Of a stretch of DNA of 64,000 nt, positions 3,691-55,225 are shown in pieces. How positions within the stretch are numbered: position 1 is the first letter of the stretch; each line of letters starts with the position of its first letter. The DNA comes from Octopus sinensis (taxonomy: Eukaryota). The stretch spans positions 372,001 to 436,000 of the forward strand of contig NW_021835988.1 of assembly GCF_006345805.1 (NCBI RefSeq). The letters run 5' to 3'. The translations under genes were made by a program, and so were the position numbers. The notes beneath the pieces were generated by a model. It searched no databases. It was given only the letters and a program-made list of their open reading frames with translations, and was not told the DNA's origin.

Positions 3691-3849
3691 ATCGAATCGA
3701 GTGAGTACAATAAAATAGACCTTGTTGTCAGAAGAGTACTCCGAAAGAATCACGTCCACGTTTTGGCAAGCAATAAAGAGAAGTTATACTTAATTATTAT
3801 TATAACACATTCCGTTGGAACATGAACGAAGTTATAATCCCACACGTGT

Positions 3850-4990: not shown

Positions 4991-5149
4991 TAGGGAGCCG
5001 AGTTTGTTGGCATTCCTCCATGTTTCGCCAATTCTGGTGTCCATTCGTTTTATCTCTGTCAATTCAGTTTTGGAAGTGTTAATTATCAGGAACCATCTGT
5101 TAAGCATTCGTCGAGAATTGTTTGAAAATGTCTATTGCACAATGTCTGA

Positions 5150-15769: not shown

Positions 15770-16343
15770 ACAAATGCCGGTGTGGGGCCACCGTCGATTG
15801 TTATGGACACCATGCTCTCTCTTGTCGAAGAAGTGCAGGACGATTTCCAAGACACAAGGCGATCAACGAAATTGTCAAGCGAGCCCTGGAGTCTGCAGGA
15901 TACCCGGCCGTACTTGAACCGGTCGGGCTTGACCGAGGAGATGGAAAACGTCCTGATTAGATCACAATTTTCCCATTTGAAGAGGGGAAACCCCTAGTCT
16001 AGGACGCAACCTGTGTGGACACTCACTGCCCGTCCAACATTGCCGGGAGCGCAGTGGACAGACTGTATGCCGCAAAAAAAACGATGAGGGCGAAGGAGAG
16101 AAAATATGAAGCGCTGCGGATCGATTCGTGTTCTGTCCGATTGTGGTCGAGACAACTGGAGGAATAAGTGGGAAATCGCTTCGCTTCCTAAAGAAGCTTG
16201 GACGCTTAGCCACATTAAAAAGCCACGATACACGTGAGACCCGGTGGCTTCTCCAGTTGATCTCCGTTCCTATCGTGAGAGGCAACGCAACGTCAATTAT
16301 GTTGGCGGGGTTCACTTCGGACCGGTTAAATTTTCTTAATTAA
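15770..16343 (+). mobile_element. CRE-clade 3' fragment (decayed)
   Basis: Remnants of [14 protein letters not shown] and WDATCVD, plus the VVETTGG tail. Confidence 0.8.
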
Positions 16344-19300
16344 TTCCATAAATTAACTTCTATATCTGTAATAAAAATGTTTATAGTAAAATTAATACTA
16401 TTCTCGATTTTCATAGTATTTAATTAGCAGCAGAGGATAAGATGGAATGGCAATTTCTTGTGAGATACGTTATTATAAGTGACCGGTTGAATACGAGCCC
16501 AGGTTGAATACGAGCCGTTAAAAAAATCGTCAATATTTTTTTAATGAAAAAATTAATCAATTAATTAATACCTTTATAATGATTTGTAATTTTAATAATT
16601 CTAAATTTTTCACAAATGTTTGTTTTCTTAACGGTTTACGTCAGATAGAATAGTAATAGATTTTTCCTCACGTTAGTTTTTTTTTGTTATGAAGGTTGTC
16701 CGTTTTAATCTGCTACAAAAGCAATAAATTATAACCTATCTGAAATATCAAATTATACCATCCAATTTGCTAAAGGAGAAGCGAAATTTTATAAGAACTA
16801 CATCCTTATTCAGATTAATAGACTCCCCGCCGGATCAATTATTTTTTTTCAAAACAAGTGGAATTCTTTTGCATGTGTTCGCTGTGGAAGAGGATGAACA
16901 GCAGAGGATATTTATTGAAAATGTTCACCTCAAAAATGGACATCATGGTCGTGATAGACTTCTTTCTCTTTTAAAGAATTTAGTCTATGGATCTTGCAGA
17001 GATGAAGTTATGCTTGTTCTCAGGTCTTGTCCACAATGTCTTGCAAGACGACTTATGAACACTCGACCAAGTATAACACCTATCAGAGCATATACAGTCA
17101 GAGAAAGGTAGTAGTTATCTACTCTAATATCAGATATATTTTTGATTTAGTTGATCTACGGCATTATTCAAATGCCAATGACAATTTTTGCTGGCTTTTG
17201 GTTGGGTTGGATTCTTTTTCTAAATTTTGTTGGACAAGACCTCTAAAGACTAAATCGGCCATGGAGGTGTCAAGTGCAATAAAAAGTATAATTCTGATGT
17301 TTGGAAAACCAACCATTTTGCACACAGACAATGACAAGGAATTCGTAAACGAAAAATGTTCGATTTATGCTCAACATATCGTATAAAACACGTCAGAGGG
17401 CGTCCTAGGTGTACATGGGTGCAGGGACAAGTAGAGCGGCTGAATCAGACATTGAAGTTCATGATTTCTTCTACGTGCTTTTCAAAGAATTTGAATTTCA
17501 GATGGATCGATATCATCGAAGAAATTACAAGTTCGTATAATTCTGTCCAGCATTCGACCACTTTACACGCTCCATTCGAATTGATGTTTGGAGCTTCTGC
17601 CGATGACACCGTTAATAATCACTACTCAGAAAACGAAATGAATGAAATATTCCACCAAATTGATTCGGGGAATAAAGAAACACAAAGTGAAGCAACTGAA
17701 TATCTTGCATGGTTTTGGTCATCGAATGAAACCACGAGAACGAAAGCAATTTCGAATTCAGACCATGCCGAAAGAAAAATGTTAGGAAAAAGAACCTGGA
17801 AGAATGATATTTCCATTTTTAACATCGGCGATCGAGTTGTCAGGAGGGTGTATCTTGACAATAATAAAAAAACACGGAAAATTGCCTTAAATGAGCACAT
17901 TGATACATCCACATATTATGTTAGAGGAGTATCTGCCACAGGAATTGTTGATCTCGAAGCAGAAGATGGTACTGTGATTCAAGAAAATAGCAGAGACTTA
18001 GCGAGGCTAGAATAGCTTAATCGAAATTTAATTCAATAAAATTTATATTTTCAAAAATAAAAATGATGTAGGGAATAATTTGACTAGTTTAAAGCAAACT
18101 TGTACACCAGTTTATGTACTAAGATTTTCTTACAAATTAATTTAAATAAGATTATTTAAGTGATAACAGGAACAAAGATCTTCTTAAATTATTTCCGAAT
18201 ATGATCAAGAAAAGTTGTTCAGCAATTTTTTTCTGTTTAATCAAAATTCAATCAATTCTTTTGTCAGATGGCTCGGATCGCTGATCTGTGTACATGAAGG
18301 ACACTCGCAAGACCCAATGGCTGTTTCAGCGTCTCTCATTGGGGGCTGCGTGGCCTCTTTCCTTCTCCTTTTTATACATACTTTCCGCCTATCAATGAAA
18401 TGTATATTATCAAAAATTAAAATGATGTAAATTATAATTTGCTAATGTTGTGAATAATTTGACTAATTTAAAGCAAACTTGGTTTAGATATAAAACTTCA
18501 TTTTTTAAAAGATTAAAGGTTCAATCATTAGTACGCGCTGTTAACCATTTTGTCAATTGGCTTTTTTTATCGGTATATTGACTATCGATTTTTTTAACGG
18601 CTCGTATTCAACCGTATCTCATTTTCGACCTGTCACATTATATAATAAAAAATGACGAAAAAAGCGCAAATTTAACATTTGGTCAAAGAATCGCAAGAAG
18701 TAGGCACCGAACAATTTCAAGGCTTTGACAAGAAAGATTTTGATTCATTTGGATTGGAATGATTCATCCAAGGACTGTTTTATCAAAGGAACTGGTATTT
18801 ATATATACCAGTCACTAAAGCAAAAAAGTAAAAGAATTGGTTTTTCACATATTTTACATTTGTTTTTGAATTATTTTCTAATGTAACATGATAAATCTGT
18901 ATAAAAATGTAACGTGAATCAATTAGGTTTTTTTTCAAATAAAATTACTTATTTAAAATTTAAAAAGCACTTTTGAAGGGTATGTTGGTTTTGTGAGCAA
19001 TGATAAAATCAGAAACAGCTTAAGAAATTATTTAAACATGGTCTAATTTATTATATAACTATTTTCAGGATAAAATAAAACGATTTATACAATTTTTTTC
19101 TGTGGTCCTTCCAAAAACCGGGTCCGCTCTAAAACCGTTGACATTTTATAAAGCTCTTCCATGTAAAAGCATGTAATGGGTAGGGCCATACGTGTCGCCC
19201 ACCCATATGAGCCGACCATGACATATTAAAGTAGTTTCTTTGAAAAATTATCGATTTTATCATCTAATTATCATCTAATTGACCAACAAAATTGAAAGAC

Positions 19301-22235
19301 CCAAAAATAGCCAATTTGAGAGGGTTGAGTGTATTAAAAAATCAGAATAATAGAATAGAATCAGAATAATAGAATAGGATCAGAATAATAGAATAGGATC
19401 AGAATAATAGAATAGGATCAGAATAATAGAATAGGATCAGAATAACAAAAAGATCAAAATAACAAAAAGATCAAAATAATAAAAAGATCAAAATAATAAA
19501 AAAATCAAAATAATAAAAAAATCAAAATAAACAATAGAATACTAGAGAGAAATAAATTTAAAAAAGTCTGTATGAATGCATGTTAATTAATTGATAAAAT
19601 GAATACAAATTCACTTGTAAAATATACTTTATGCAAGATATTTTACCAGTAATCAATTTAATTAATAGTCAAACAAATAAAAAAACAAAAAAATTATAAA
19701 ATAAAAACATAAAAGCACGAAAAAATAAAATAAGAATTAACTGCATACATGCACAACAAAAGAAAATAATATAACGTGCGTGATAATTTATTGTAGTTAA
19801 TTCGATAAATTAAAAACATTTAAAAAATAAAATAAATAACATTTAATGTCATCAATCAACGTTGGCCTGATCGAATCGAGTGAGTACAATAAAATAGACC
19901 TTGTTGTCAGAAGAGTACTCCGAAAGAATCACGTCCACGTTTTGGCAAGCAATAAAGAGAAGTTATACTTAATTATTATTATAACACATTCCGTTGGAAC
20001 ATGAACGAAGTTATAATCCCACACGTGTCCCAAGCGAAACAATCTTCTTGACCATCCTTGTCTATGCCCCTCTGTTGCGGGCGAGATCCCGCAAAGATTC
20101 TAGGTCGTCCCAGTTTTTGAAACTTTTGCCATGAAGTTTGAGATCCCTCCCCAGAACTGCCGGAAGAGTGGATCTAGGACCTAGATTTCTTTCCGGTAGT
20201 GAAATATCTGCTGAAGACATTTTATACCATGCACAGTTCGATGGCTATCACAAGGTGAAACAGCATGTCGTGTGTTCGATTTACGAAAAGAAATATCAAT
20301 CTTTTACTCATCAAAGCAAAAAGAGTGTCCTTTGGATAAAAAAATTTCTTAATTGACTTAGCATTTCTGGTTGATGTACTCACATATATTAATAATTTGA
20401 ATATATCTTTGCAAGGTAAAGACCAAACAAAAATCCTGGCCGTCGTTAGAATAACTTGTATAATACATTTCTTTTAATTAATTTTCCTTCTTTCTTATCT
20501 TTTGTCCATGAAATAATTATTTATTTTAATAATATGATGTCCCTGATGAACGAGAGCATTTCCTGTCTAAGAACTCATTCGGTTTCGATTACAATGGGCA
20601 ACCTATGCGCTCACTTTTAATAATTAAAAAAATTACTATATTAATATCGAAAAAATAATGCAGAAAATGTGCGGCCGTGGAAGAGAAGGAAAACAAAATG
20701 CTATGCGGCCGCAAACCCAAAAAGCTTGCGCACCCCTGATCTAGGTCTTCCACGATATTTGTCTCCATGTTCGGAGAAATAATCGTCCATTGCCCGATTG
20801 GCCGGAGCTCTGGGGTCCATTCGCAAAATATGGCCAAATAATTTCCACCGGCCTCCAACGATTTCTTGAGACAACGGCGTGGCATGGTAATGTTTATACA
20901 GAGATAGATTGTTAATTTTTGATGGCCAGTGTATTCCGTGTAAGAGACGTAGTTTTTTACGGTGAAAAGAGTCTATAGTCTTCAGTTCAGTGTCCGAGAT
21001 CCCCCATGTTGACGAGTTGTATAGTAGAACAGGCTTTACGAATGCATTATAAAGCCTTGATCTGAGAGCCCGATTTATCGGCCAAGCTTGGAGCCATTTT
21101 TTACGTATTCTGCTCAGAGCCGCGGTAGCAAGCATCTTTCTACGAGAAATGTCTTCACTATCTCAAAGTAGGGAGCCGAGTTTGTTGGCATTCCTCCATG
21201 TTTCGCCAATTCTGGTGTCCATTCGTTTTATCTCTGTCAATTCAGTTTTGGAAGTGTTAATTATCAGGAACCATCTGTTAAGCATCCGTCGAGAATTGTT
21301 TGAAAATGTCTATTGCACAATGTCTGATATAACACAAGCAAAACAATCATACGAACTATCTATTATGTCTTTCAATGTAAGAGGCCTTAAATCGACTTGG
21401 AAACAACATGTGAGGACATGAAGAAATACAGGATCTTGGTTGGATGTCTACAAGAAACCAAAGTGAAACTCGGGGATGAGCAAGTCTATGGGGACTATCG
21501 CCTTATTCTGCTGCCCTCTGAATGCGGACACTATGGCCAAGGCTTTGTGGCACACAAACACTTATCTACTTGTATTCATCGCTGCTGGAGAGTCATCGAT
21601 CGAATATCTGTACTACAAATAAGTACCGGACACAAATCCGGAATGCTTTCTATCATTAATGTTTATGCCCCTCAAAGTGGCAGGATTGCCAAGAATCTCG
21701 ACGAACTAGACTCCTTTTACGAGGAGCTAGCTAGGACACTCACAAGTCTGGAGGATTCGTACAGTCTATTCATCGCGGGAGATTGGAATGCCAAAGTTGG
21801 CATCCGCTCTGGGGACGAGCAGTTTATTGGCAGATATGGCCGTGGGCACTTTTCTGGCCCATTTCTGTGAGACCTTCTCACTATTTTTGTGTTACACGGC
21901 TTTCTGCCACGCTGCACGACATCGGACCACATGGACTGGAAGTAGAACAAATGGGGCTGGTGAACCTACATCAATCTACAACCAAATCGATTATATTCTT
22001 TGTCGACAGGCCGATAAGGCTGCCTTATTTGACTCCCGATCATATGGAGGATCTCGGGTTGACAGTGATCATAAAATGGTCGTTGGACGTTTCTGCATCA
22101 AGAAACGCCACGCGCCCCTCAACGCGCGAGGACGTCCATCTGGTACAAGGAAAAGATATCTCACGGAAAAACTGTTGTACTCCTCCCTCACTCGGGAAAA
22201 CTATCAAAAATCATTGGAGAGCTATATCTCTTGTA
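16078..22235 (+). repeat. Segmental duplication copy B
   Basis: Collinear with 1..5830; retains ~100 bp near 18030-18120 and ~215 bp near 21795-22010 that are absent from copy A. Confidence 0.93.
16478..18637 (+). pseudogene. Inactivated copy of the 401..2476 Ginger-like transposon
   Basis: Same TSD TTATA; left end TGT>AGT; premature TAA at codon 13; DNG>DND; 1 bp frameshift near 17355. Confidence 0.85.
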
Positions 22236-24448: not shown

Positions 24449-27400
24449 AATTCTGTTTTAATTTATTAAAAAAATATGGAAAGCCAAATTAATCAGAAAT
24501 TAATCGGCCAGCAAGCCGGATGGAACAGCTGTTCCCACGCACAACGGCCAACAGGATCCTTTGGATTAGGAAAGTAAATTCCCTAGGATCCTTGGAGCGT
24601 AAAGAACAGAGGTGGCCAAGTTTCTTTAGATGATCAACTGTCTTTGTGCCAAAGACGCACGAAGTCTCAACAACAATTGGCCAAAACCAAAAGCCGTCTA
24701 ACAAGCCCCGGTATTTTTCGGATTTTGTATGTTCAGCCCTATTAGCACGGGACCCGGGCAGAGAGGCGGATTCGTTGATGGCCGACTTGGAGAAGGAATC
24801 AACACACGTGGCATCCCAAACTAGTGGTTTACCAGCGTCGAAAGCGAACAACGTCGAGCCATCAGGCCTTTTTCCATCACCACGGTCAAGACCAATTGGC
24901 TCAAGGACAGAAGGATACCCTGCCTTTTCGAGGGCATGGAGAATGATCTTGTTAAGAGCCGAATGACGAGGTATGCGACCTGCGCTTTTCTTGCAGGAAA
25001 GGGCATGGAGCCCGTATGTGTCCATCGTTGATCCACACCGGCAGGGGTGGGGATTACAAATCGGTAATCCCAGACGAAGGCATATTCCAAAACGGAGGGC
25101 ATCAGAGTCGAGGCAGGTATCCAAATGGGTCGTGGGAAGGCAGTTAAGCCAGGAGCCAGAATACGGTTGGCGACTGGCACGGAAGCAAGCTAGTCTGTGC
25201 TGGTCCAAGAGACGCTCCAACGAGTCAACGTAATATTCACAAATAATTTTGTCCCATTCACGTTGGAGAGATCGTTCTGACGGTAAGACAAAATGCTTTT
25301 CCTTCCAAAGCAAGAGTGCAGAATTGATATCAGAGTCCAAAGTTGATTCGGGTGATTTTTCAAGAATCTTATGGACAAGAAGATACAATCCTGAAGAAGA
25401 TGAAAGGAAAGCGGGAAGAGAAAGGTCGAGCGCGGAGCGAAGCCCCAGACCGCCAGAGGATACAGGAAGTTTGGCCTGACACCAACCAACGTCATCAAAC
25501 TTGACATTAAAAATCTTCTCAGCGGAAGAACGCACCAGAGCGTCGAAAGAATCCAAGGCAATAGGAATAGAAAAGCAGCGGGAACTCCTTAGGACATAAT
25601 TGATTTTCGGGATCAGAAGATAATTTTTGAGAATGAAATAAGCAGGGTGGGGATCAATATCTGCAAGTTTATCACAAAGGGAAGAAAGGGCATTCCTCTT
25701 GGAATTAAGAATACGAATGGCGGATTGGTCGTAGATCGGAGCACCCAAGATTTCGAGATCAGCAGTGGAAGTATGTCTCAGATCGGGCAAAAGGCCTCGA
25801 AACTGAGAAAAAATGTTTTGAAAACTAACACAATCGATGTTAACATTTACAATTTCAGATTTGAGAGAATTAATTTCGAGACCAATGGATGACAAAGCTG
25901 GGATTAGAGATTCCAAGTCCTTTATCAAAATATCGGGCGGACCACCAATAGTACAATCATCCAAATACCAAATATTCAGAGGCGACAAATTCTTACGGGC
26001 AATAAAATCCACGGAAAGGGCAAATAATAACGGGCCCAAAGGATCGCCTTGCTGTACACCACAAGAAGAGGAAATAAAGGAATCACCTGCAGCCAAAAGG
26101 CTCGGGTATCCATATGAAAGAAAAACAAATGGCAGCAATGAAGGAATTCTGTCTTTACAAACCTCAAGTAGATGCTCTCTGTTGAGAGAATTGAACGCAT
26201 TTTTAACATCCAATTTTAGCAGTAGCCGGGGCTTTTCAGAGAGGTGAGTCGAATCAATAAAACACCGGGATGCGTGGACCGCGGCCTCGCAACCGCCAGG
26301 CACGCCAACGCCCAACTGAATGGGCTGGAGTTCGTCACTAATAGACGGAATTACCAGTTTGCACCCGACTTTTGCAAACAAACGGCGGAAAACATTTCCG
26401 ACGGCAATAGGCCTAATGCCGCCGTCTTTTTTCTCCAATGCTGTCAGGTTCGCAGAGAAGAAAAGCAATCTAGCATGTTCAGATATATCCCCGCAGAGGA
26501 ATAAGTTACATAGCTTGGTGATAGAATGTGAAAGACAGTTTCCGGCCTCGGCAGTATCGGAAATGAGATCGATTAAGTGAATGGGACGGAGACCGTCAAC
26601 ACCACCACTACTATTGCCTCTGAAAGATTTCAAGGCAAACAAAAGTTGCTGGACAGACGAAGAAGCTATCGAGACCCCCTCTGGAGTTTGGGCACAAAAA
26701 TTAGGCACATTGCCAGTCGGGTGCTTTGAGCTGAGAATTTTGACTACATCCGGAGTAATGGTGCGGACGGAATCGGAAGATGAAAGAATGCGGACCGCAG
26801 AACCGACGTCGTGCGCCATTAAGCAGGAGTTGATACGTTTGCGTAACCGAATGGGGTTGTTTTTAGGAATGGATGAAGTTGTTTTATTGGACTTGCCCGT
26901 AAGAGAAGGCAGACTGAAAGATTCTTTCATGAACTTATTTATATTTTCTTTGATGGAAGAGGAAAGGGATTTGTTCGAGCATGAACCTTGAGCTGGGGAA
27001 GCGAGGGCAAATACTGCAAAGCAGAACAGTCGGTTCCAATTCGGAATGGTCTGGTCACAAATGACCGACTCTATTAAAGCCGACAAGGCCTTCGCCGCAG
27101 AAAAGCGGGCAGATCTGGGAATTCTAATAGGGATACGATAAGAAGCTCGATAATTTCGAACGAGTCTTAAGACTGATTCTGGATTAAGCAGGAAGGGGTC
27201 CACGAAGCGGGAAGGACGAATGGGAACAGAGGACCCAGAACTGATGACACGAGGAATGTATGAGGGAGGGAAAGAGGAACAAGCAGAACAGACCCAACGA
27301 GTAAGAGATGAAGCAGACTTCTTGGACAACTTGATACAAGAACGATGGAAACTGGCGTCACAGGAGTCGCAACGGATGGTTTTCTTCCTTTTGTTACAAG

Positions 27401-27534
27401 TGTTACAAACGGAACAGAGAGTCATCGATAAGGAAAATTAGATTGATAAGATAATACAACGAAGAACAACAATGAATGTGACAAAATTACAATAAAATTG
27501 AATAAATTGAAAAAAATTACACCACAACAACAAC
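24449..27534 (-). mobile_element. Apparently full-length CRE-clade non-LTR retrotransposon
   Basis: Single uninterrupted ORF; ~110 nt upstream and ~40 nt downstream of non-coding sequence before unrelated repeats; no TSD seen. Confidence 0.82.
24489..27425 (-). CDS. 978 aa retrotransposase: PHD finger + reverse transcriptase + CCHC + restriction-like endonuclease
   Basis: C4HC3 pattern at aa 4-49; GGIRPIAVG, LDVKNAFN, GVQQGDPLGP and YLDD; CRC...HALSC, RHS, KRPDG, WDATCVD and VETS. Confidence 0.92.
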   Translation of the reverse strand: MTLCSVCNTCNKRKKTIRCDSCDASFHRSCIKLSKKSASSLTRWVCSACSSFPPSYIPRVISSGSSVPIRPSRFVDPFLLNPESVLRLVRNYRASYRIPIRIPRSARFSAAKALSALIESVICDQTIPNWNRLFCFAVFALASPAQGSCSNKSLSSSIKENINKFMKESFSLPSLTGKSNKTTSSIPKNNPIRLRKRINSCLMAHDVGSAVRILSSSDSVRTITPDVVKILSSKHPTGNVPNFCAQTPEGVSIASSSVQQLLFALKSFRGNSSGGVDGLRPIHLIDLISDTAEAGNCLSHSITKLCNLFLCGDISEHARLLFFSANLTALEKKDGGIRPIAVGNVFRRLFAKVGCKLVIPSISDELQPIQLGVGVPGGCEAAVHASRCFIDSTHLSEKPRLLLKLDVKNAFNSLNREHLLEVCKDRIPSLLPFVFLSYGYPSLLAAGDSFISSSCGVQQGDPLGPLLFALSVDFIARKNLSPLNIWYLDDCTIGGPPDILIKDLESLIPALSSIGLEINSLKSEIVNVNIDCVSFQNIFSQFRGLLPDLRHTSTADLEILGAPIYDQSAIRILNSKRNALSSLCDKLADIDPHPAYFILKNYLLIPKINYVLRSSRCFSIPIALDSFDALVRSSAEKIFNVKFDDVGWCQAKLPVSSGGLGLRSALDLSLPAFLSSSSGLYLLVHKILEKSPESTLDSDINSALLLWKEKHFVLPSERSLQREWDKIICEYYVDSLERLLDQHRLACFRASRQPYSGSWLNCLPTTHLDTCLDSDALRFGICLRLGLPICNPHPCRCGSTMDTYGLHALSCKKSAGRIPRHSALNKIILHALEKAGYPSVLEPIGLDRGDGKRPDGSTLFAFDAGKPLVWDATCVDSFSKSAINESASLPGSRANRAEHTKSEKYRGLLDGFWFWPIVVETSCVFGTKTVDHLKKLGHLCSLRSKDPREFTFLIQRILLAVVRGNSCSIRLAGRLISD

Positions 27535-27829
27535 CTCTTATTGCACTCATGCTGAAAATATGATTTCGAAAATACCATTATCGAATGATACTGTTCATCG
27601 ACGAATTTCTGAAATGTCAGAAAATATTAAGTGTAAGTGTTTTAATTCTTCTCGAAACGTAAATTCAGAACACTATAAGATATGTCGCGTGGCTTACCTA
27701 CGACGTTGTGGCATTGCACAATACATGTGAAAAAGAGTCGCAAACCCCCTATCCCTTCTTCATGGAGACGTGGATGGTGTCGTGCATTTCTACTTATTTC
27801 TGGCGATGTCAAACCAAATCCAGGACTCT

Positions 27830-28450
27830 CTCTGATTATTGCCTAAGTCAACTCAATGGAATTCAAACAAAGATTATGAGACTTAGACGATTTCTTCTCC
27901 AACTCAGTGGATATTGCTTTAATTCAGGAGTCAAAGCTTACATAGAAAGATTCAACCCCAACTTTCCCTGGATATTCCGTGTTCCGTAAACTTGGAAAAG
28001 GTAGAGGCCTCCTAACCTTTATCCGCAATCAGATTAATGTTATGGACCTATCAAACAAGATATCGGCCATTATGGACATGGATTATCCTTTAGAACAAAC
28101 CACAGTGAAAATAAGTTTGAGATCCTTCCGGATGACGATATATATACCTCCTGCGTCTTCATGTTATAAAGGATATCGTCCTAAACTTGAAGATTTTATA
28201 AGATTAGAAAATATTAATTTGCGGGGATTAGAATGCAAAAAGCCCCCTATGGTATAAAAACCAACTATTGGACCAAAAAGGATCTATAATATTGGACAGA
28301 TTGACAACTTGTTAATTCTGAATGACCGGAACAAACATACAAGAACTCCTTCCAGAAATGGTGACTCCCGAACGTCACCTGATATAACTCTAGCTGCCCT
28401 ATCCATTCCCCAAACAATCACGTGGGACGTTATTTATGACAGCACATCTT
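27830..28450 (+). mobile_element. Jockey/I-type endonuclease fragment
   Basis: QLNGIQ, DIALIQESKL, IYIPP, LILND and TSPDITL motifs across frameshifts. Confidence 0.7.
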
Positions 28451-28949
28451 CTTAACGATGGCAAGATTTACTGGAGGTCCCCTTGAAGAGAGTATCTTGC
28501 CTATAAGAAGTGTTTTAGAAAATTTGAAAAAACCATTCCCTTTGGACATTGATTAAGAATTCGAGATAAAAAGGGATAAAAAGAGACGAACTGACACCGG
28601 GATCACTTAATTAGACGATTACTATTCTTCTTTTCTGTGTTCCAGGGGTTAAATAATAATATAAAAATGGGTTTCGTTTCACTTTCAAAAGCAAATCTTC
28701 AAAAAATTTAAAAAATCAGAGTTTAGGGATCTTTAAGTGATTGAAATGAGAGAAAAGCATAGATTGAAAATTCATCCAAAAAATTTTGAATTCTCTGACA
28801 AAAAGGAATTTATTCAAAAAAACAATTGCTTGCTCAGATTTTTTTGTATAGAAGAGGAAAAAGTAAAATTTACTGTTTTACTCGAAATGAGATTGAAAAT
28901 GTTATTAAAAACTGTGTTTTTTGTTATCTTTACTTATGTCGTATGCATG

Positions 28950-29298: not shown

Positions 29299-31711
29299 CA
29301 GTGGTTCTCAACCTGGGGTCCGCGAGATTTTTCTTAAACTTTATTCAAATGTTTATATTTAATGATAACAATTTTAAGTTAATATATAATAGAATTAAAT
29401 AATAATTAATAATATCTCTTTTAGATATATTATAAATTAATAAATTTTAATATTCAATAATACTGAGGGGGCTAAATAAATTAATATATTTTAATATTCA
29501 ATAATACTGAAGAGGCTAAATTACTTTAAAGCTGAATGTAACGCAAGCAATCCGTTCGGCTGGGTTAATTTAGTTAACTAACAATTGTTTTGTTATTCAA
29601 ATAAAAAACCTAATAAAGAAAAAAAAATGTAACTCAATTATTTATAAAATCGTATATATATATTTTTTAGTAAAAGTTAATAAAATTTTTAAGCATTCTA
29701 TTGATATGAATTCCTCGAATGTTATTAAGATACGCAAATATAATCCTGATTATATAAAATATGGGTTTATTTGTATTGATAAAGATGGATTTGAAAGCCC
29801 AAAATGTGTTGTGTGCATGAAAATTCTGTCACACAATAGCATGAAACCAACAACTCTTGTGAGACACTTGCGCACATGTCATCCCCATCTAATCCACAAA
29901 AATAAAGATTATTTTATTTCTTTGCGTAAAACGATGAAAAATCAAGTATTGACTCGTTTGATACAAACTTTGCCTTCTGATAATTCGATGCTATTAGCAT
30001 CTTACATGATTTCATTACGTATAGCGAAAAAAAAGAAACCTCATAATATTGCCGAAAAACTGATTCTTCCTTGTAGTAAAGACATAGTACGTACTCTTAT
30101 TGCACTCATGCTGAAAATATGATTTCGAAAATACCATTATCGAATGATACTGTTCATCGACGAATTTCTGAAATGTCAGAAAATATTAAGTGTCAGGTTA
30201 TTGATATTATATTATTTATTTTAACAGGTGGTAAAACAAATAAAAACTTCATGCCATCAAAATTTCGCTATACAAGTTGATGAATCCACCGATGTAGCGA
30301 ACTGTGCTCAATTAATAATATTTGCTCGTTATGTATATGACGAAGATTTTAAAGAGGAATTTTTATTTTCCTATTCGCTTGAATCGACCACTAAAGGAGA
30401 GGATATTTTTCAAGCAATTTCTATGTTTTTTGACAGTGTTGGGTTATCTTGGAATAATGTATGTTGTTGCACAACCGATGGAGCTCCAGCAATGCTTGGC
30501 TTTCATTCTGGCTTTAGAGGCCAAGTTAGACTTGCTAACCAGGAAACGAAACATATGCATTGTATGCTACATCGATATGCACTTGCTGCAAAAACATTAC
30601 CTTCAGATTTAAGATATGTTCTCGATGATGTCGTACATATCATAAATTATATTAAAAAGAGTGGTTTAAATTCGCGGATTTTCAGACTTATCTGCGAAGA
30701 ATTTGAAAAGAATGGAAAGGCTTTGTTATTCCACACTGAGGTGAGATGGCTATCTCGGGGAAACATTCTTGCCAGAGTTTTTTCTTTGAGGAATGAATTA
30801 TCTGAATATTTTATTCGCGAAAACAATTCCAAATCATCGGAATTTATTTCGAAATTAATGGATAGTTCATGGCTATCTAAACTTGCTTACTTGAGAGATG
30901 TCTTCTCTCGTATAAATTCACTCAACAAATCGCTTCAGGGAAGACGTGAAACAATAATTGATTTTTGGATAAAATTAACTTTGGTAACTGTTTCATATTA
31001 ATTATTAGTGCTTGTTTGATGAAGTTAACACTGTGGAAAGAAAAAGTAAAACTAAATAATTTTACTATGTTTGAATCTTTTGAAGAACAATCTGTAAATA
31101 TAGATGCATTTGAAATCAAAAAAATAACCGAACTTATTTATGCACATTTAACATATCTTCAACAAGAAGTAAATAAATACTTTCCAGAATTGAACGAAAT
31201 TGATTTGAAATTCATTCGTACACCATTCAGTGTTGATCCACATTTGGTCGATGAAAATATCAAAGAGGCTTTTATTGACATGATCAATAATTCAAACGCA
31301 AAAGATTTGTATGAAAAACTTGCTTTATCAAGATTTTGGTGCGAAATGTGTCAGCATTATCCTTCCGTAAGCGCAAATGCATTAAATTTGTTGCTTATAT
31401 TCCCGACAACATATTTATGCGAACATGGCTTCTCAGCACTTCTCAATATAAAAAATAATCATCGCGCAAGACTGAATATTGAGGATGACATCAAGATTTG
31501 CTTGTCGACAACCGAGCCTCTTATTGAAAAAATTGCCTCGAAAGAACAATATCAACCTTCTCACTAATTTTCTCTATTGATTTAATAGTAAATTTTGTTT
31601 TTAGATAAGTAAAATTTTTTTGACAAAAAACTTAATAAATATGTAGGGGGTCCGCGAAATTTTTCATTTACTCACAAAGGGTCCGCGGACAAAAAAGGTT
31701 GAGAACCACTG
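29299..31711 (+). mobile_element. Buster/ZBED5-type hAT transposon, near full length, frameshifted transposase
   Basis: TIRs CAGTGGTTCTCAACC / GGTTGAGAACCACTG; BED finger, DESTD, TTDGAPAM, HCMLHR, LFHTEVRWLSRG and TTYLCEHGFS; 31 nt intron 30197-30227 and a probable one at 30984-31008; flanks differ (ATTTAAAC vs TACTAGAG). Confidence 0.9.
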
Positions 31712-32101
31712 TACTAGAGGATGGCACGTTGCCCCGGATGTCAGTATGCATGTTGTTGATGATCCTATCCGTGGGGACCTTATCGAGTTGGTTGATGTAG
31801 ATTATTATGTCGACTTGCCAACACTCTGTTGTAATCTAAGACGGCTAATCCAAAGTTGACCGGGGGAGTCTTGCCCGAAGGTGAGGGTTTCTACTTCTTT
31901 GATGAGTCGAGCCACCTTGTAACAAAAATCAATGGTTGCTCAACATACCGTCATCGAATTTATGACTTCTCACATGACTATTTTGTCGTTAAGAATACGA
32001 AAGGGTGGTTTAATTGGATCCTCTCTTGGTTCGTCAACATTTATACGGTCGTCCGTATAGATGTAGTTAACAATGATGATTACCACCAAGTAGTTTTTCT
32101 T
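31712..32101 (+). other. Endogenous viral element: nodavirus-like protein A methyltransferase/guanylyltransferase fragment, frameshifted
   Basis: Frame 1 TRGWHVAPDVSMHVVDDPIRGDLIELVDVDYYVDL; frame 2 PKLTGG...INGCSTYRHRIYDFSHDYFVV...YTVVRID...DYHQVVFL. These match the remembered Nodaviridae DVDYY and GG.Y.H.lWDy..D motifs; GC-richer than the flanks. Confidence 0.78.
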
Positions 32102-32280
32102 AAAAAAAAGAAAAAATAAATAAAAACAAAAATATAAAGATAAAAAAATTACAAATTTAAAAAAGTTTAAAAAAAAACAAATAAAAATTAAAAAAGAAAT
32201 TACAAATTTTGAAAAATTAAAAACACCAAAAAAACAAAAATAATTCAATAAATAAATTTAAAAAATAAAACAAAAAAATT

Positions 32281-32342
32281 TTGATGAAACAGGCCCTCCG
32301 CAGGAGCTAGGTCGCGGTGAGCGAAGCGAGCTGCCGAGCTAG
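32281..32342 (+). mobile_element. Helitron 3' terminus
   Basis: Identical to the reverse complement of 59797-59858; GC-rich subterminal segment ending CTAG followed by T. Confidence 0.8.
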
Positions 32343-32519
32343 TTTAAAATAAACCATTTTTGAACAAAAAAACATTGAAAAAAAATTTGGAAATAACGAA
32401 AAGATTTCTAACCATATTTGAGGATGAATTAAAAAGTACAATTTTTCGGATGAATGCGTTTTTCACGTGATTCCAAACAAAACAAGAAAAATAGTTGATA
32501 GGAAAAGCGGTGAACAATT

Positions 32520-33036
32520 TAAGTCAAAAAATATTTCATCTGTCTTACGCCTCCCCCAGCAGTCTCTTGTTTGCCGACAATGTTATTATGTCCGAAACTG
32601 GTATTCAACAAGGCGACCCTCTTGGGCCTCTTTTATTCTCACTCGGTGCTGATCACATTGCCCGTCAATTGTCCTCTGAGGTCAACATTTGGTACCTCGA
32701 TGATGTTACTCTTGGTGGGGCTTTGGAGATCGTCAAGAATGATGTAGAAAAAATTATTTCTGGTTTTGCTTCCATTGGACTCGCTTTGAATGGATCCAAT
32801 TCTGAGCTGATATGTTTGTCTGCGAGCCCTTCAGAATTCAAACTTATTTTTTCCACCTTATCTCACCATATTGAAGACCTGTGCATCACCCAGCTTGATG
32901 ACCTTATCATTCTGGGTTCTCCAATCAATAGCAAGTCTACTAGGAAGGCTTTATGTAACAGGCTCGAAGAATTGGAAACTCTATTCTCCCGCATTTCCAA
33001 ACTTGAATCCCATTTAGGCCTTTTCTTGCTCAAGAT
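32520..33036 (+). mobile_element. CRE-clade RT fragment (second subfamily)
   Basis: GIQQGDPLGPLLF and IWYLDDVTLGG. Confidence 0.85.
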
Positions 33037-33085
33037 GCATTAAAACTCCTGATGAATTAAAGAACATTATGAACTATATTGAATA

Positions 33086-37317: not shown

Positions 37318-37388
37318 TGCGCCTGCCGGGAATCGAACCCGGGTCGCTCGCATGGCAAGCGAACATGATACCTCTACACCACAGGCGC
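37318..37388 (-). tRNA. tRNA-Gly (GCC)
   Basis: 71 nt cloverleaf GCGCCTG...CAGGCGC-A; anticodon arm TTCGC-TTGCCAT-GCGAG; GGTTCGATTCC T-loop; T6 Pol III terminator immediately downstream. Confidence 0.95.
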
Positions 37389-39314: not shown

Positions 39315-41247
39315 ATGGATTTAATTGAAGGAGCAAAATTTTACATAGATTTAATGCTTGAAGACGCCGGTCCCGGAATGAAGGCAATGCTATTCGATGC
39401 CAATACAGTAACAATATAAAACATAATTAAATTAGGCAAAAATAGTAAGCTACATATATTCCCCAACGGAACTATTATACAAACAAGTATTTTTATTCGA
39501 CCAATTAAAAAACCAAACTTGCGAGTCTCTATCTTTCGTAGTGGCCATAATTTTTGTGCAGCCGACCAATTCCAATTATAATTTAATCCTCAAAGAACTG
39601 TCAACCCCCCGATTTACACATTATGCAATATGTCCCCAATATTTAAATATTTTAGATTTCTCAAGTTACTGTCCAACTGACTTTATCGAAGGGATTGCCA
39701 TGGCAGATAACGACGAGAGAGTCCTGGCCCTCAGAGTATTCTTATCTGGGTTACTCCCTTAAGGAAATTTGCTTAGACTACTATGCCCATGGTCCTTGTC
39801 TCTTTACATTCAACATTGAGACATGTCATACGGTTGTAATTTAATTAATATTTAAAAATAGAATAATGGAGGTTGGAAAGGTGATTCATTTGAGCTTGTT
39901 TGTGGGGGATTAATGTCAGTGATCAATTCGTTGGGGCAAAACCCCGAGATCCGTCATCAAGGCTCGTCCCCTCATTGTGCCAAAATATGCTATGAACTAA
40001 AAAATATGTTGGACATGCAGAACGAATCTTCTAAGGACTATGATTCGCTGCTAGTCATAGTAGATCGGAATATAGACCCAGTGATCCCTGTCATCAATTC
40101 GGTCTCTTTAACCGAGTTCACTAGCATAGTGGACTTATGAGGCTATGATACACGAATTGGTAGGAATACACGACAATACGGTAAAATTGACACCGAAAGG
40201 CTCAAAGCAGATTGTAATAACATTAAATTCGGCGAATACATTTTTTAAACAGGTTTTCTGGACGATATTGAACCACGTGTATAGAATCGGTTGCTTTTTT
40301 ACGATGAAATTGTGTCCAACGTGTCCAGTTGTATAGAAAAGATCAAAGGATTTAGCCAAGGCTTAACGGGGACTGAGTCATTGTCATATATGAAGGTTTT
40401 TTGGTTCAGCATGTTCAGGGATTTGTGGAAAAGTACACCAAACAGAGGAAGTGGGTGGAAATGGTGACACAACACTCCGACCTTGTAGGCGAACTAACGA
40501 GAATAGCCACAGAAAACAGTCTGTTCGAGACTTCGCTTCTGGAACAGGACATTATTGCATCAAAATTAGATTTCTCTCAAGTTATGCAAGTATTTTTAGT
40601 TTTTTTACAATTTCTATGGCAGAAAGTTGGCAATTTGTTTGCCGATTGCCCGAATGTGACTGCCTTGGACACAATTCGACTGTCCTTGTTGTGTTTGATT
40701 AGATTTCCTGAGGCTGCCAACTATAAACTTGACATATTCAACAAACATTTGCTCAAGCTGAACGTCTCTCCTCAAATGTATCAAATTCCGCAGTCATTTC
40801 AACGTTTTTTGAGCAAAAAGTCGAGTAATCGGACTGATGGGACTATTTTGCGGTGGAGGGAGGCTTTGAAGAAGGCCTCCAAGTCTTATCAAAGTGACCC
40901 TGTCAATTTGTACCGACGCTACCGACCATATTTGGCTACCCTGCTTTCCGAGATTGCCGAAAACAGTCTATCACTAACTGACTTTCCAAGCTCTTTGCAA
41001 TATAACCCGTTTTTTGGAAAGGATGTGAAGAAGGGAGCCCAAACTAAAGGGGGTTACTCAAAAGTTGTCGTATTTATTGTTGGAGGAGTCACCTATGCTG
41101 AGGCTGGAGTCCTGGAATCAGAAAATTGGCCTTTTCAGGTTATTTTGGGAGGAACTCGAATTCACAATTTTGACACGTGAGTTGAGGGGTGTTATTTTAT
41201 TTAGTTATTCCAAGGAGATAGTCAACATTCTTAGTTCGTCTGGATGA
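39315..41247 (+). CDS. VPS45: Sec1/Munc18-family vacuolar protein sorting protein 45; 10 exons, 559 aa
   Basis: Exons 39315-39407, 39436-39631, 39656-39735, 39764-39832, 39862-40101, 40130-40252, 40285-40395, 40419-40589, 40623-41176, 41205-41247 sum to 1680 nt. Motifs EDAGPGMK, DRNIDPVIPVINSWTYEAMIHEL and VFIVGGVTYAE...VILGGTRIHN. Confidence 0.93.
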
Positions 41248-41381: not shown

Positions 41382-42485
41382 TTAAACAAATTTTGAATTA
41401 TAAATTCCTCTGAGGTCACTTAGAATATTTTCGAGTTGATTAAAAAACTCACATGACCCCTCATTTGATGAATAGCAGGCAGCCTTGTAAGTGTTTGATA
41501 TTTGACTGCTAATGAATGTGATCATATCCTCAATCATGTTGAAGACATTTTTAAAGTCAAGGCTTTCATTGTGATGGGCCAAAACCGATTTCATATTGCA
41601 CATCATTGAATTAAAATTTGCAAATTGTGCGATAATTTTTTTATGTCCTTGTTTTATTGATTTTTTCTTTTGTTTTGTGAGTTTTTTGATTTCCGTGTCC
41701 ATATTTTTTAAGATTTGTGAGATCAAGACGTCATTTTTAGCGAAGGACCTTTTTCTTCTCACAACGAACTCTTGACTGAGATTAGAAGACAGTAGCGGAA
41801 TCTCCTGCATTTTTTCAATATTTTTTTGAAGTGCCGTGTACTGTTTTTTAAACTCAATTCGTATTTTATCAACAATCCTTGCTTCATTTTCTCCAAATAG
41901 AGCGAGATCTTCGGTTATTTGGACAGTTTCGAGCAGATTTTGAAGGTCGGTGGTTATCTTTTTGAAGCATTCTGTGTTTTTGATGTTAATTTTGAACAAT
42001 TGTGAAGTTTCCGAACCCCATTTCTTCATGGTCAGCATACTTGAAGTTTTTGTTAACATTTTTCTAGTTTCAGTAAGTTTTTTCTCGATTGAAGATAAAT
42101 ATTTTTTATTTTTTTGTGCGCTTAATGAAGCTTCTGGAATGATTTTGATAATATTTTCAAGCGATCGAATTATTTTGTCGACAATTTTTGAAAATTCAAA
42201 TAAAAAATCATTTACTTCTGGTCGTTCGTCGAAATATTTAGCAAGTCCAGTATTTATTATCAAAATTATTTTTATGAAATCATCCATCGCACTCCGAATA
42301 TTTAGTTTTGTCTCTTTTGGAATCAAATTTTGATTAGGGGCCGTTTCCTCGACCAATGTGTCGTATACGGTGTTGCACATGTCGTACAGTCCGTCATATA
42401 TTCCGTCGTAGATTGGCTCGTTCTCTCCGTCTTCGAACATATTTAATCTCACCATTTTTAATTTGTTTTCCAATTCTTCATCCAT
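41382..42485 (-). CDS. Hypothetical 367 aa helical/coiled-coil protein with an N-terminal tyrosine cluster
   Basis: Uninterrupted 1.1 kb ATG-TAA ORF in AT-rich DNA; convergent with VPS45; no TE motifs recognised. Confidence 0.75.
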   Translation of the reverse strand: MDEELENKLKMVRLNMFEDGENEPIYDGIYDGLYDMCNTVYDTLVEETAPNQNLIPKETKLNIRSAMDDFIKIILIINTGLAKYFDERPEVNDFLFEFSKIVDKIIRSLENIIKIIPEASLSAQKNKKYLSSIEKKLTETRKMLTKTSSMLTMKKWGSETSQLFKINIKNTECFKKITTDLQNLLETVQITEDLALFGENEARIVDKIRIEFKKQYTALQKNIEKMQEIPLLSSNLSQEFVVRRKRSFAKNDVLISQILKNMDTEIKKLTKQKKKSIKQGHKKIIAQFANFNSMMCNMKSVLAHHNESLDFKNVFNMIEDMITFISSQISNTYKAACYSSNEGSCEFFNQLENILSDLRGIYNSKFV

Positions 42486-45510: not shown

Positions 45511-46179
45511 ATAAAATAAATGAATCGTAATATAAAATAAATGAATCGTAATTGCCTCAAATGATTTTGAATCCATGAAACTGCATTGTGAAAGGATAGT
45601 CGAGGAACAAAAGAATCAAAAGACTATTCACCGTTTTTGGTTATCTACATTACATTACATCGAGAACGAATAGATTTGGATTTCTGAATTTTTTTCTATC
45701 TAGTTGTTTATTGAGGACTTGAGGAAGAATACTGGATTAAAAGTTTTTTTAATCGCTGGTGATTCAAACCGTAAACTTGATTCTTGTTATAACTCTTTAA
45801 ATACAAATAGTGATATTTTTTTTAAATATGAGGCAAAACTGACAGTGTCTTCATTGGAAAGTTGTAAAAATTTAAAATAATAAAATTAAAGTTGATCCCG
45901 TGTACAATTTAGCTTATTAATCTAAAAACCGATTTCTAAATGTAAATTCGGATTTATAAAATGGACGTTAATTCAGAAAATAACGAACGATAGGTTAATA
46001 AAGTGTAATGCTAGACCTACATTTTGCTAACTTATTACAAAATAATTATGATCACTTCTTGGAAATTTTATTATTATTAAATAATTTTATTTATGTTTCA
46101 AAAAACTATAAAAATAATAAATAAATTGATTTGGATCATTTCATACATACTCTCATACTCTACTCTAATCATACTCTTG

Positions 46180-47400
46180 AACACAATAAGGAAAATCTTC
46201 TCGCTCGTAACACTGGAACGTATTAAGGACCCTGTTAATGAATATCTGTCGGCTAGCCAAAGTGGATTCAGGCCTGGGCGATCAACTGCAGATGTAGTAT
46301 GGGGACATAGATGGATCTGTGCCATATCTCAGAAATTTAAAATGGCGACCACAATATTGGGCATTGATATGAGCAGGGCATTTGATACAATCCGCAGAGA
46401 CAAGCTAATGGAGATCCTCAAAACTATTCTTGACAATGACTCGATCAGAATGGTTCGAGCACTACTTATAGACACCGAGTTAACGGTGAAGATCGGACCC
46501 GTACAATCAAGATCTTTCAAAACAAGCATTGGAACGCCCCAAGGTGATTCAATATCACCTGTACTATTCATTGTCTATCTTGAAGCGGCACTAAGAGATC
46601 TGAGAAAACTAGTGAAGTCTACTTCAATAACTGAAGTGATATATGCCGACGATTCGACTCTCGAAGAACTGCTGAACATTGCTCCTCAGGCACTGGAAAA
46701 ATGGTTCTTAAAAGTGAACATAGAAAAAACCGAATATGTAACAATCAACCGGGAGGCAAATAGAACAGACGAAAAATGGCGAAACTCGAAAAAAGTTGGA
46801 ACTCTTTTAGGAGATAGTGAAGACATTATGAGGAGAAAGATGCTATCGACTGTTGCACTTAACAAACTGCGGACCACTTGGCTACGAAACCGCGAGGTTG
46901 GAACGGCCTTACGTGCCAAATTATACAATGCTTTTATTAAACCCATACTTTTGTACAACGGAGGAACATGGGGAATATCTGAGTCTGAATCAAAATCTCT
47001 TGATGCATTCCATAGAAGACAGTTAAGAATTCTTATTGGCATCAACTGGCCAAAGAAAATCAAGAACTCCACCCTATACAATATCTGCAACAGCAGACCC
47101 GTCAGTGTGGACATTACCGAAGCACGTTGGCGCCTATTGGGCCACATTCTAAGACTCGACCAGGATGTTTATGCTAACTGGGCAATGGAATCATATTACG
47201 CAAAGGACGAAAGATCTGCGTCCCGAGGACGCCCACGAAATACATTACCTATTGTAATCTCAAAAGAACTACAACGCGTTAAAAGACAACTGAAAAATGG
47301 AGACGACCTAGATACTCTCAGGAGTATAGCATACAACCGCACATCATGGAAAATTATGACCGAAAAGATAGTCTCATATGTGGCACATGTGGGAACTTAA
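46180..47400 (+). mobile_element. 5'-truncated RTE-clade LINE (RT and C-terminus in an open frame)
   Basis: QSGFRPGRST, IDMSRAFD, GTPQGDSISP, YADD and RWRLLGHILR; ends TAA 47400. Confidence 0.88.
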
Positions 47401-52163: not shown

Positions 52164-52632
52164 AACAATAATAATAAATTATTAATATTAACAAAGATTT
52201 TTTGGTTTTATGATTTTCATTTATTCTATAATCTTAGAAACTTAGTTTATAATTGAAAATTACGATTAATTTCAAAATAAATTAGATTCTATTCACAATA
52301 AAAATTAAACTCAGAGGAAAACTATAGATAAAACATGCTGCAATTGCCATAGTTTTGAGAAAGTCTCTAACAAATTTGAAAATAACGTTCTAAAGTTCGT
52401 ATCCATTAAATTCATACATTTTTTTCGATACATTTTTTCAGTTCTCAAATATCACAAGTCTAGTAGAAAAATTCAAATCATAGAAACCCAAAATAGAGTT
52501 ATCTCTGAATCAACCAAAAAACAATTTTTCATTGAACATTGCATAGAGATTTGAGAAAGTTTTTGTTTTGCAGGTTATTTATTTATTTATTAACTCCAAG
52601 ATCACCGAGAAAGATAGGTCAGAACTAACTAA

Positions 52633-54850: not shown

Positions 54851-55225
54851 TTATTGAGTACGGAAAGGATATATTCGTTTTGCAGGTTAATTTTTCTCAA
54901 CAAGGGAGTATCTTCAAATTCATTTTAATAACTAAAAATATTCATAATTCCAGTATTAAAACAATTTTTTTAACATTAAAAGTAACTTTGAAGCTTCATT
55001 TTTGTATCTAAAGAAACTTGTTCATAAACAGACAAGAAATGCCTACATTAGCAAATAACTTTCAAAACTTCATAAATTCTTTTTGATCGTTACAATTAAG
55101 AAATGATTCATTGAAAAACACGATAGAATATTCGAAGGATTTTCAAAATTGAACTTGGAAAAGACAACAGTATCAAGTTTTTTAATCAAGAGAAAACAAG
55201 GACCAGTTATGTTCATTTTGTAAAT

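What the first reader, a model, noticed from the sequence alone, without database searches (positions are those of the whole stretch)
31712..32101. Endogenised nodavirus-like RNA virus fragment
Seen: a ~390 bp GC-richer island that translates in two frames to ...DDPIRGDLIELVDVDYYVDL... and PKLTGG...NGCSTYRHRIYDFSHD...YTVVRID...HQVVFL. Established: Nodaviridae protein A carries an N-terminal capping domain with DVDYY followed by a GG.Y.H..WD motif, and nodaviruses have no DNA stage. Inference: viral RNA was reverse-transcribed, probably by one of the abundant LINE RTs, and fixed in the germline. It would record a noda-like virus infecting this little-studied parasite lineage. A small deletion near 31848 removes the expected P.llYT segment, so the copy is non-coding.
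Basis: partly seen in the sequence, partly recalled or inferred. Interest (0 to 1): 0.85.

Follow-up and report, generated by a model that had tools for sequence, protein, structure and literature searches.

The report
Noda-like RNA virus fossil fragment
A 390-base broken piece of a nodavirus-like replicase gene (its RNA-capping domain) sits in the DNA of a transposon-rich eukaryotic genome, so it is a genuine but ordinary viral fossil of a rarely endogenised virus group.

Summary
Window 31712-32100 (+) translates in two reading frames. Each piece independently matches Pfam PF19222 (Nodavirus Vmethyltransferase), in order along the profile.

A scan of 1.84 billion proteins returns one genuine relative, a 977-aa noda-like replicase. 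A profile of 13 such replicases hits only these two pieces among all six-frame pieces of the 64 kb window. The same profile hits flock house virus protein A in the PDB.

The copy cannot code. It is truncated at both ends, has one frameshift, lacks the catalytic His/Arg part of the domain and has no polymerase part. It is single-copy in the window.

- **Left edge:** the terminal inverted repeat of a hAT transposon that has no target-site duplication.
- **Right edge:** a 180-nt A-rich tract, then a 64-nt Helitron-like 3' end.

The region is a mosaic of transposon fragments about 7.4 kb from a host Vps45-like gene.

Reverse transcription by a host retroelement is inferred, and which class did it is unresolved. 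The host and the "parasite" claim could not be checked. Noda-like endogenous elements are already known (Bursaphelenchus, PMC5177903), so this is a new member of a known kind.

The parts
31712..32100 (+). Endogenous noda-like replicase fragment. It covers the back two-thirds of the capping domain plus about 35 codons beyond it. It is broken: truncated at the 5' and 3' ends, with one frameshift and no in-frame stop inside either piece.
   Evidence: Pfam PF19222 hits on both pieces, together covering profile positions 52-147 of 148 in order. Best library hit is P0001, a 977-aa noda-like replicase. Profile of 13 relatives gives E 2.8e-8 and 6e-6. 15 of 20 family-invariant columns are kept. Some relatives align to the last codons before the A-rich tract. 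Single copy in the window.
29299..31711 (+). hAT-type DNA transposon whose right inverted repeat forms the left edge of the viral fragment. The flanks are not a target-site duplication.
   Evidence: Perfect 16-nt terminal inverted repeats. ORFs with the hAT dimerisation domain PF05699. Flanks atttaaac and tactagag do not match, whereas a second hAT-like element at 55226-57244 has a 7/8 duplication.
32101..32279 (+). A-rich low-complexity tract starting directly after the last viral codon.
   Evidence: G+C 12.5%, strong A excess. Degenerate short-period arrays. Weakly similar to other A-rich tracts at 3201-3425, 19351-19600 and 60051-60200(-).
32280..32343 (+). 64-nt Helitron-like 3' terminus ending CTAG, followed by T.
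   Evidence: 100% identical to 59796-59859(-). That copy follows a Pif1-like helicase C-terminal ORF at 59909-60109(-). The hairpin is not significant, z -1.36.
32540..33040 (+). 5'-truncated non-LTR reverse transcriptase fragment, a neighbour in the mosaic.
   Evidence: 42% identical to residues 436-602 of the 978-aa RT ORF. RVT_1 hit.
24489..27425 (-). Uninterrupted 978-aa PHD + reverse transcriptase ORF. It is an example of a possibly active RT source in this genome and is not part of the fragment.
   Evidence: PF00078 E 1.1e-14 and PF00628 E 6.6e-7.

Best explanation
A stretch of the plus-sense replicase RNA of a nodavirus-like virus (order-level relative of Nodaviridae) was copied into DNA by a host retroelement's reverse transcriptase. 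It was then joined into a transposon-rich region of a eukaryotic genome.

What survives is 389 bp in sense orientation. It covers the rear part of the capping (methyltransferase-guanylyltransferase) domain.

- **5' side:** lost at a junction with the end of a hAT transposon. That hAT lacks a target-site duplication, so a rearrangement or adjacent deletion took place there.
- **3' side:** ends abruptly at an A-rich tract, which is followed by a Helitron-like terminus.

The copy has one frameshift, no start of the gene, no catalytic His/Arg region and no polymerase domain, so it cannot make a working protein. It is most likely an inert molecular fossil. At most it could serve as a template for small RNAs if the surrounding mosaic is transcribed.

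**Shown:** viral origin, anatomy, boundaries and broken state. **Inferred:** reverse transcription by a host retroelement, germline residence and lack of function.
For: **Viral origin**
- Two ordered PF19222 hits.
- One genuine relative in 1.84 billion proteins. It carries Noda_Vmethyltr plus an RdRp match.
- Both pieces align collinearly to it and to 12 further relatives.
- The profile of the 13 relatives hits flock house virus protein A (PDB 8fm9) at E 1.5e-75, including its capping domain.
- 15 of 20 invariant columns are kept. These include the column equivalent to FHV D141 and the column equivalent to FHV W215, where the fragment has Tyr like all 13 relatives (PMC6165433).

**Not a replicating virus**
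- One frameshift.
- Only about 130 of roughly 980 codons are present, and nothing else of the replicase occurs in 64 kb.

**Embedded in host DNA**
- It abuts a complete hAT inverted repeat.
- It lies about 7.4 kb from a Vps45-like gene with introns and about 5 kb from a tRNA-Gly on the same sequence.

**RT sources**
- Long uninterrupted RT ORFs occur in the window.
[quoted passage not shown] A host RT is therefore needed.

**Relatives look exogenous**
- Their replicase ORFs start 20-155 nt from the ends of 3.1-4.6 kb contigs.
Against: - No reads were available, so neither junction is verified independently of the assembly.
- Each Pfam hit alone (24.0 and 24.7 bits) is below the family's 30-bit gathering score. 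Significance rests on the ordered pair and on the independent searches.
- The closest relative is only about 40% identical over 60 residues, so the donor lineage is unsampled and placement inside Nodaviridae proper is not established.
- No target-site duplication, and no clean poly(A) tail, ties the insertion to any one reverse transcriptase.
- The host is unidentified.
Confidence: 0.82

Rival explanations
1. The viral cDNA was made and inserted as a chimera with an LTR retrotransposon, by template switching during its reverse transcription. This is the case described for the Bursaphelenchus noda-like element. It was not made by LINE target-primed reverse transcription.
For: In the published precedent the noda-like element lies inside a Bel/Pao LTR element (PMC5177903). 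Integrase zinc-finger fragments lie 1.2-3.4 kb downstream on the same strand. Integrase core domains occur elsewhere in the window.
Against: No LTR pair brackets the fragment. The nearest RT fragment is of non-LTR type and begins 440 nt away, with no homology in between. An A-rich tract follows the fragment directly.
Confidence: 0.2
2. The fragment is a passenger inside a non-autonomous Helitron-like element whose 3' terminus lies 180 nt downstream. It would have been captured after endogenisation, could have been copied to other places in the genome, and later received the hAT insertion.
For: A 64-nt terminus ends CTAG before T and is 100% identical to the end of a Pif1-like helicase-bearing fragment elsewhere in the window. 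The A-rich tract upstream of both termini is weakly similar.
Against: No 5' end could be defined, and the hairpin is not significant. The fragment is single-copy in the window. The hAT flanks give no duplication that would link the sequence left of the hAT to the fragment. The 64 nt may simply be a truncated Helitron piece inserted into an A-rich tract, since the sequence beyond it is again A-rich.
Confidence: 0.12
3. This is an assembly chimera or contamination: viral cDNA or reads wrongly joined to genomic repeats.
For: Both junctions lie in repeats (a transposon end and a low-complexity tract), where assemblers err. No read evidence was available.
Against: A replicating virus would not carry a frameshift in its replicase. 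Only about 13% of the gene is present, and the join to the hAT is exact to the last base of its inverted repeat. No near-identical virus exists in 15 billion proteins, IMG/VR or JGI metagenomes.
Confidence: 0.05
4. This is chance similarity, or a cellular or transposon domain that merely resembles the viral capping domain.
For: Each Pfam hit alone is below the gathering score. Three non-viral proteins scored E about 1e-5 in the large search.
Against: Those three are internally repetitive proteins whose scores are sums of 3-8 weak repeats of at most 13 bits each. The viral hit is one 43-bit stretch. Two adjacent pieces hit the same family in order, and the other frames hit nothing.
Confidence: 0.02

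Closest known systems
eBxnv-1, the endogenous nodavirus-like element of Bursaphelenchus xylophilus (Cotton et al. 2016, PMC5177903)
   Same: Both are replicase-derived sequences of a noda-like plus-strand RNA virus. Both sit in animal genomic DNA among retroelements and are distant from sampled viruses.
   Different: eBxnv-1 is a 570-aa open, expressed gene model covering the polymerase motifs, and it lies inside a Bel/Pao LTR element. The window copy is about 130 codons of the capping domain only. It is frameshifted, has no polymerase part, lies between a hAT end and an A-rich tract, and its expression is unknown.
Flock house virus protein A capping domain (PDB 8fm9; mutational study PMC6165433)
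   Same: The family of 13 relatives matches FHV protein A residues 65-222 and 473-863. The window fragment covers the columns equivalent to D141 and W215.
   Different: The pieces themselves give no direct hit to the FHV chain. The H93/R100 part is absent. The relatives sit on 3.1-4.6 kb contigs, so some may not share the classical two-segment layout. I left the sequence beyond the replicase gene unexamined on purpose.
Non-retroviral RNA-virus EVEs of arthropods embedded in repetitive, transposon-rich regions (e.g. Aedes aegypti, bioRxiv 10.1101/127498, abstract seen)
   Same: It is a short, degraded viral fragment lying in a mosaic of transposon fragments.
   Different: No small-RNA data are available, the host is unknown, and membership of a piRNA cluster is untested.
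LINE-made processed retrocopies
   Same: Sense-oriented copy of an RNA with an A-rich tract at its 3' end, truncated at the 5' side.
   Different: The tract is impure and resembles other A-rich tracts in the window. The target-site duplication cannot be read. The viral RNA end is internal to the gene, so the tail cannot be the RNA's own.

Membership tests
Nodavirus-type replicase capping domain (Pfam PF19222 Noda_Vmethyltr) | Significant match to the family profile | tested here: met
   Two ordered hits at 24.0 and 24.7 bits, E 3.5e-5 and 2.1e-5. Each is below the 30-bit cut-off alone; together they cover profile positions 52-147 of 148. Supported by E 2.8e-8 and 6e-6 against a profile of 13 replicases.
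Nodavirus-type replicase capping domain (Pfam PF19222 Noda_Vmethyltr) | Conserved residues shown by mutation to matter in FHV (H93, R100, D141, W215; PMC6165433) | tested here: inconclusive
   The D141-equivalent Asp is kept (12 of 12 relatives). The W215-equivalent column is Tyr, as in all 13 relatives. The H93 and R100 columns lie in the part that is missing from the window.
Nodavirus-type replicase (protein A) | RNA-dependent RNA polymerase domain downstream of the capping domain | tested here: not met
   No piece of the window other than the two at 31712-32100 matches the 960-position replicase profile. The fragment is a remnant, not a gene.
Nodaviridae in the strict sense | Phylogenetic placement within the family; two-segment genome of the donor | not testable with these tools
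   About 130 codons at about 40% identity to the nearest relative is too short for a reliable tree, and the donor virus is unsampled.
Endogenous viral element of a non-retroviral RNA virus | Virus-derived sequence contiguous with host DNA | tested here: met
   In this sequence it is flanked by a hAT end and other transposon pieces. It shares the contig with a Vps45-like gene and a tRNA-Gly. Reads to confirm the joins were not available.
Endogenous viral element of a non-retroviral RNA virus | Germline inheritance (same locus in other individuals or species) | not testable with these tools
   The host genome is not in any collection searched.
LINE-mediated retrocopy | 3' poly(A) tail | tested here: inconclusive
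   A 180-nt A-rich but impure tract starts right after the last viral codon. Similar tracts occur elsewhere in the window.
LINE-mediated retrocopy | Target-site duplication flanking the copy | not testable with these tools
   The 5' flank is replaced by the hAT element, whose own flanks do not match.
Helitron (for the 64-nt neighbour and a possible capture) | 3' end CTRR inserted before T, with a subterminal hairpin; 5' TC end | tested here: inconclusive
   CTAG before T at both copies. Hairpin z -1.36, not significant. No 5' end found. The helicase fragment scores below the Pfam cut-offs.
hAT transposon (left neighbour) | Terminal inverted repeats, hAT dimerisation domain, 8-bp target-site duplication | tested here: not met
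   Inverted repeats and domain are present but there is no duplication. This is a hAT element whose flank was rearranged.

The most novel reading that the evidence does not exclude
The fragment lies inside a Helitron-like non-autonomous element, or a transcribed transposon mosaic. That element would have captured DNA derived from an RNA virus and spread or expressed it. It would then act as a heritable small-RNA template against a still-circulating, unsampled noda-like virus, in a very divergent animal lineage with no recorded viruses.
Probability: 0.08. Interest if true: 0.65.

Novelty: new member of a known kind. Interest (0 to 1): 0.38.

Why it matters
Endogenised pieces of plus-strand RNA viruses are much rarer in the literature than those of minus-strand viruses, and noda-like ones were first reported only in 2016 (PMC5177903).

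This copy records past contact between an unidentified, strongly divergent, transposon-rich eukaryote and a noda-like virus lineage. That lineage has no close relative among about 15 billion public proteins: the best match is about 40% identical over 60 residues.

If the host proves to be a poorly studied lineage, this would be a cheap first pointer to its virome. It would also give a probe for looking for a living relative in its RNA data. In itself it is a short, broken, probably inert fossil and adds no new mechanism.

Tried and rejected
**Searches with the viral pieces**
- The word-indexed protein search with the downstream piece found no candidates.
- Direct PDB searches with either piece gave only noise or nothing.
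- Scans of IMG/VR and JGI metagenomes for close relatives of the downstream piece gave pattern matches only, none confirmed.
- The three non-viral hits of the large search were rejected as repeat-driven.

**Searches for more of the element**
- I looked for the missing 5' part of the fragment to the left of the hAT. There is no viral homology there and no matching 8-bp flank.
- I looked for further replicase or capsid-like remnants anywhere in the window and found none.

**Models tested and not supported**
- One LINE split by nested insertions, with an endonuclease remnant at about 27.7-28.5 kb and the RT fragment at 32.5-33.0 kb. The two match different RT families, and 32344-32539 shows no RT homology.
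- A Helitron hairpin test was not significant.

**Host identification (failed)**
- Exact look-ups of 12 window ORFs.
- A homologue search with the Sec1-family exon. My threshold of 1e-10 was too strict, and this used the last search of that kind.
- A literature search for the two sequencing-run accessions that hold the nearest relative.

**Nucleotide comparison**
- Comparison with the nearest relative's gene showed no similarity.

Full report
**1. The observation**

Two + strand reading frames carry the quoted peptides. The segment has 42.4% G+C against 34.1% for the window. Neither frame piece contains a stop, which is rare for shuffled sequence of the same composition: 5.8% of shuffles for the upstream piece and 0.2% for the downstream piece. 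The segment is single-copy within the 64 kb.

**2. Is it viral?**

I searched the two pieces apart and never joined them. Several independent lines agree.

- **Pfam.** Each piece hits PF19222, 'Nodavirus Vmethyltransferase', and nothing else, with E 3.5e-5 and 2.1e-5. The two hits follow each other along the profile and together cover positions 52-147 of 148. Each score alone (24.0 and 24.7 bits) is under the 30-bit gathering score.
- **Large protein library.** A filter-only HMMER scan of 1.84 billion representative proteins with the downstream piece gave four hits. The best, P0001, is a 977-aa protein with a full Noda_Vmethyltr domain and an RdRp match. Both window pieces align to its capping domain in the right order.
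- **The other three hits are spurious.** They are internally repetitive proteins whose scores are sums of weak repeats of at most 13 bits.
- **Relatives.** P0001 has 12 relatives, all with PF19222. Both pieces align to all of them at matching positions, and 15 of the 20 family-invariant columns covered are kept.
- **Whole-window check.** A profile of the 13 replicases, run against all 1929 six-frame pieces of the window, finds only these two pieces (E 2.8e-8 and 6e-6) and no other part of a replicase.
- **Link to a named virus.** The same profile hits flock house virus protein A in the PDB (8fm9) at E 1.5e-75, including its capping domain. This ties the family to nodaviruses through a named hit rather than from memory.
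- **No competing reading.** The four other frames of the segment hit nothing in Pfam at E<=1.

The viral origin is therefore solid.

**3. What is kept and what is broken**

Using as a bridge to the residues mutated in PMC6165433, the fragment covers two of the four tested columns.

| FHV residue | State in the window fragment |
|---|---|
| D141 equivalent | Asp kept |
| W215 equivalent | Tyr, as in all 13 relatives |
| H93 and R100 | In the part that is absent |

Breaks in this one gene are as follows:
- Truncation at the 5' end.
- Truncation at the 3' end.
- One frameshift with a small net loss of codons relative to the relatives.
- No in-frame stop within either piece.

About 130 of roughly 980 codons survive. 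The polymerase part is absent from the whole window. The copy cannot encode a working protein.

Some relatives align up to the last codons before the A-rich tract, so the viral part fills the whole of 31712-32100.

**4. Boundaries and surroundings**

- **Left edge.** The fragment starts at the base after the right inverted repeat of a hAT element at 29299-31711. That element has perfect 16-nt inverted repeats and a hAT dimerisation domain. Its two flanks do not form the 8-bp duplication that another hAT-like element in the window shows. There is no viral homology left of it. So the hAT end marks a rearrangement, adjacent deletion or recombination that removed the 5' part.
- **Right edge.** The last viral codon runs into a 180-nt A-rich, impure tract at 32101-32279.
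- **Helitron-like piece.** Next come 64 nt that are 100% identical to 59796-59859(-). They end in CTAG before T, and in the second copy they follow a Pif1-like helicase C-terminal ORF. This is a Helitron-like 3' end, although the hairpin is not significant.
- **Further right.** A 5'-truncated non-LTR RT fragment lies at 32540-33040, followed by integrase zinc-finger fragments.
- **Wider context.** The window holds long uninterrupted RT ORFs, a Vps45-like Sec1-family gene with short introns at about 39.5-41.2 kb and a tRNA-Gly.

The fragment therefore sits in a mosaic of transposon pieces in a eukaryotic chromosome.

**5. How it got there and what it does**

[quoted passage not shown] A host reverse transcriptase must therefore have made the copy. 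This is inference.

The sense orientation followed directly by an A-rich tract fits priming on an A-rich RNA end with a template switch into viral RNA. It also fits retroposition of a tailed RNA fragment. However, the tract resembles other A-rich tracts in the window, and no target-site duplication can be read.

An LTR-element chimera, as in Bursaphelenchus, and later capture by a Helitron-like element remain open.

My estimates are as follows:
- **Genuine endogenised noda-like fragment:** 0.82.
- **Class of the reverse transcriptase:** LINE somewhat more likely than LTR, but unresolved.
- **Present role:** most likely none. A small-RNA template role is possible but untested.

**6. Relatives elsewhere**

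The nearest relatives are unnamed proteins from run assemblies and JGI samples. Their replicase ORFs begin 20-155 nt from the ends of 3.1-4.6 kb contigs, as expected of free viruses. I fetched only the gene (flank 0) and did not read the rest of those contigs.

The best identity to the fragment is about 40% over 60 residues. No closer relative exists in the 50%-clustered library of 15 billion proteins, in IMG/VR or in JGI metagenomes. There is no nucleotide similarity to the nearest relative's gene.

**7. Host**

The host was not identified. Exact look-ups of 12 ORFs failed. The Sec1-family exon has no hit at 1e-10 and matches Vps45 in the PDB only at E 4.5e-7. This points to a very divergent lineage absent from the collections. 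The 'parasite' statement cannot be judged.

**8. Comparison and novelty**

The closest known case is eBxnv-1 of Bursaphelenchus xylophilus (PMC5177903). That element is larger, open, expressed, covers the polymerase and lies inside an LTR element. The present fragment is a capping-domain remnant beside a hAT end. This is a new member of a known kind.

All of these bracket the frameshift. The consensus line printed by the alignment tool was not used.

Noticed in passing
window 29299-31711: hAT element with perfect 16-nt inverted repeats and transposase ORFs (257 aa and 200 aa) but no target-site duplication. A 103-nt internal piece (30094-30196) is 99% identical to 27535-27637.
   Followed up: partly
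window 55226-57244: Second hAT-like element of a related family, with a 7/8 target-site duplication (ttgtaaat / ttgcaaat).
   Followed up: partly
window 59796-60109 (-) and 32280-32343 (+): Helitron-like 3' end: a Pif1-like helicase C-terminal ORF, then a terminus ending CTAG before T. The last 64 nt are shared at 100% between the two loci, and both are preceded by an A-rich block.
   Followed up: partly
window 24489-27425 (-), 52633-54903 (-), 46093-47400 (+): Long uninterrupted reverse transcriptase ORFs (978 aa with an N-terminal PHD finger, 756 aa, 435 aa). Retroelements in this genome may be recently active.
   Followed up: partly
window about 39541-41180 (+): Host gene of the Sec1 family, nearest to Vps45, with several short introns. 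It is very divergent: PDB Vps45 matches only at E 4.5e-7, and there is no hit at 1e-10 among 5.8 billion proteins.
   Followed up: partly
window 37318-37388 (-): tRNA-Gly (GCC), Rfam 61.8 bits.
   Followed up: no
window 1-5602 and 16079-21794: A 5.6-kb direct duplicate at about 98% identity, 16 kb apart, containing integrase and RT-related ORFs.
   Followed up: no
window 60861-62323: Tandem satellite of about 94-nt units, roughly 15 copies at 95-97% identity. It translates into repeated peptide ORFs on the minus strand.
   Followed up: no
window about 27700-28460 (+): Degraded non-LTR endonuclease remnant with stops, preceded by a 2A-like peptide motif in the translation. Its C-terminal part (28285-28449) is related to the N-terminus of the 756-aa RT ORF.
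   Followed up: partly
window 41382-42485 (-): Intact 367-aa ORF next to the Sec1-family gene with no convincing Pfam family. It is possibly a host gene of unknown function.
   Followed up: no
window 51127-51620 and 59300-59790; 51846-52362 and 62719-63235: Two further dispersed repeat pairs at 93-95% identity. The first abuts the Helitron-like terminus at 59796.
   Followed up: no
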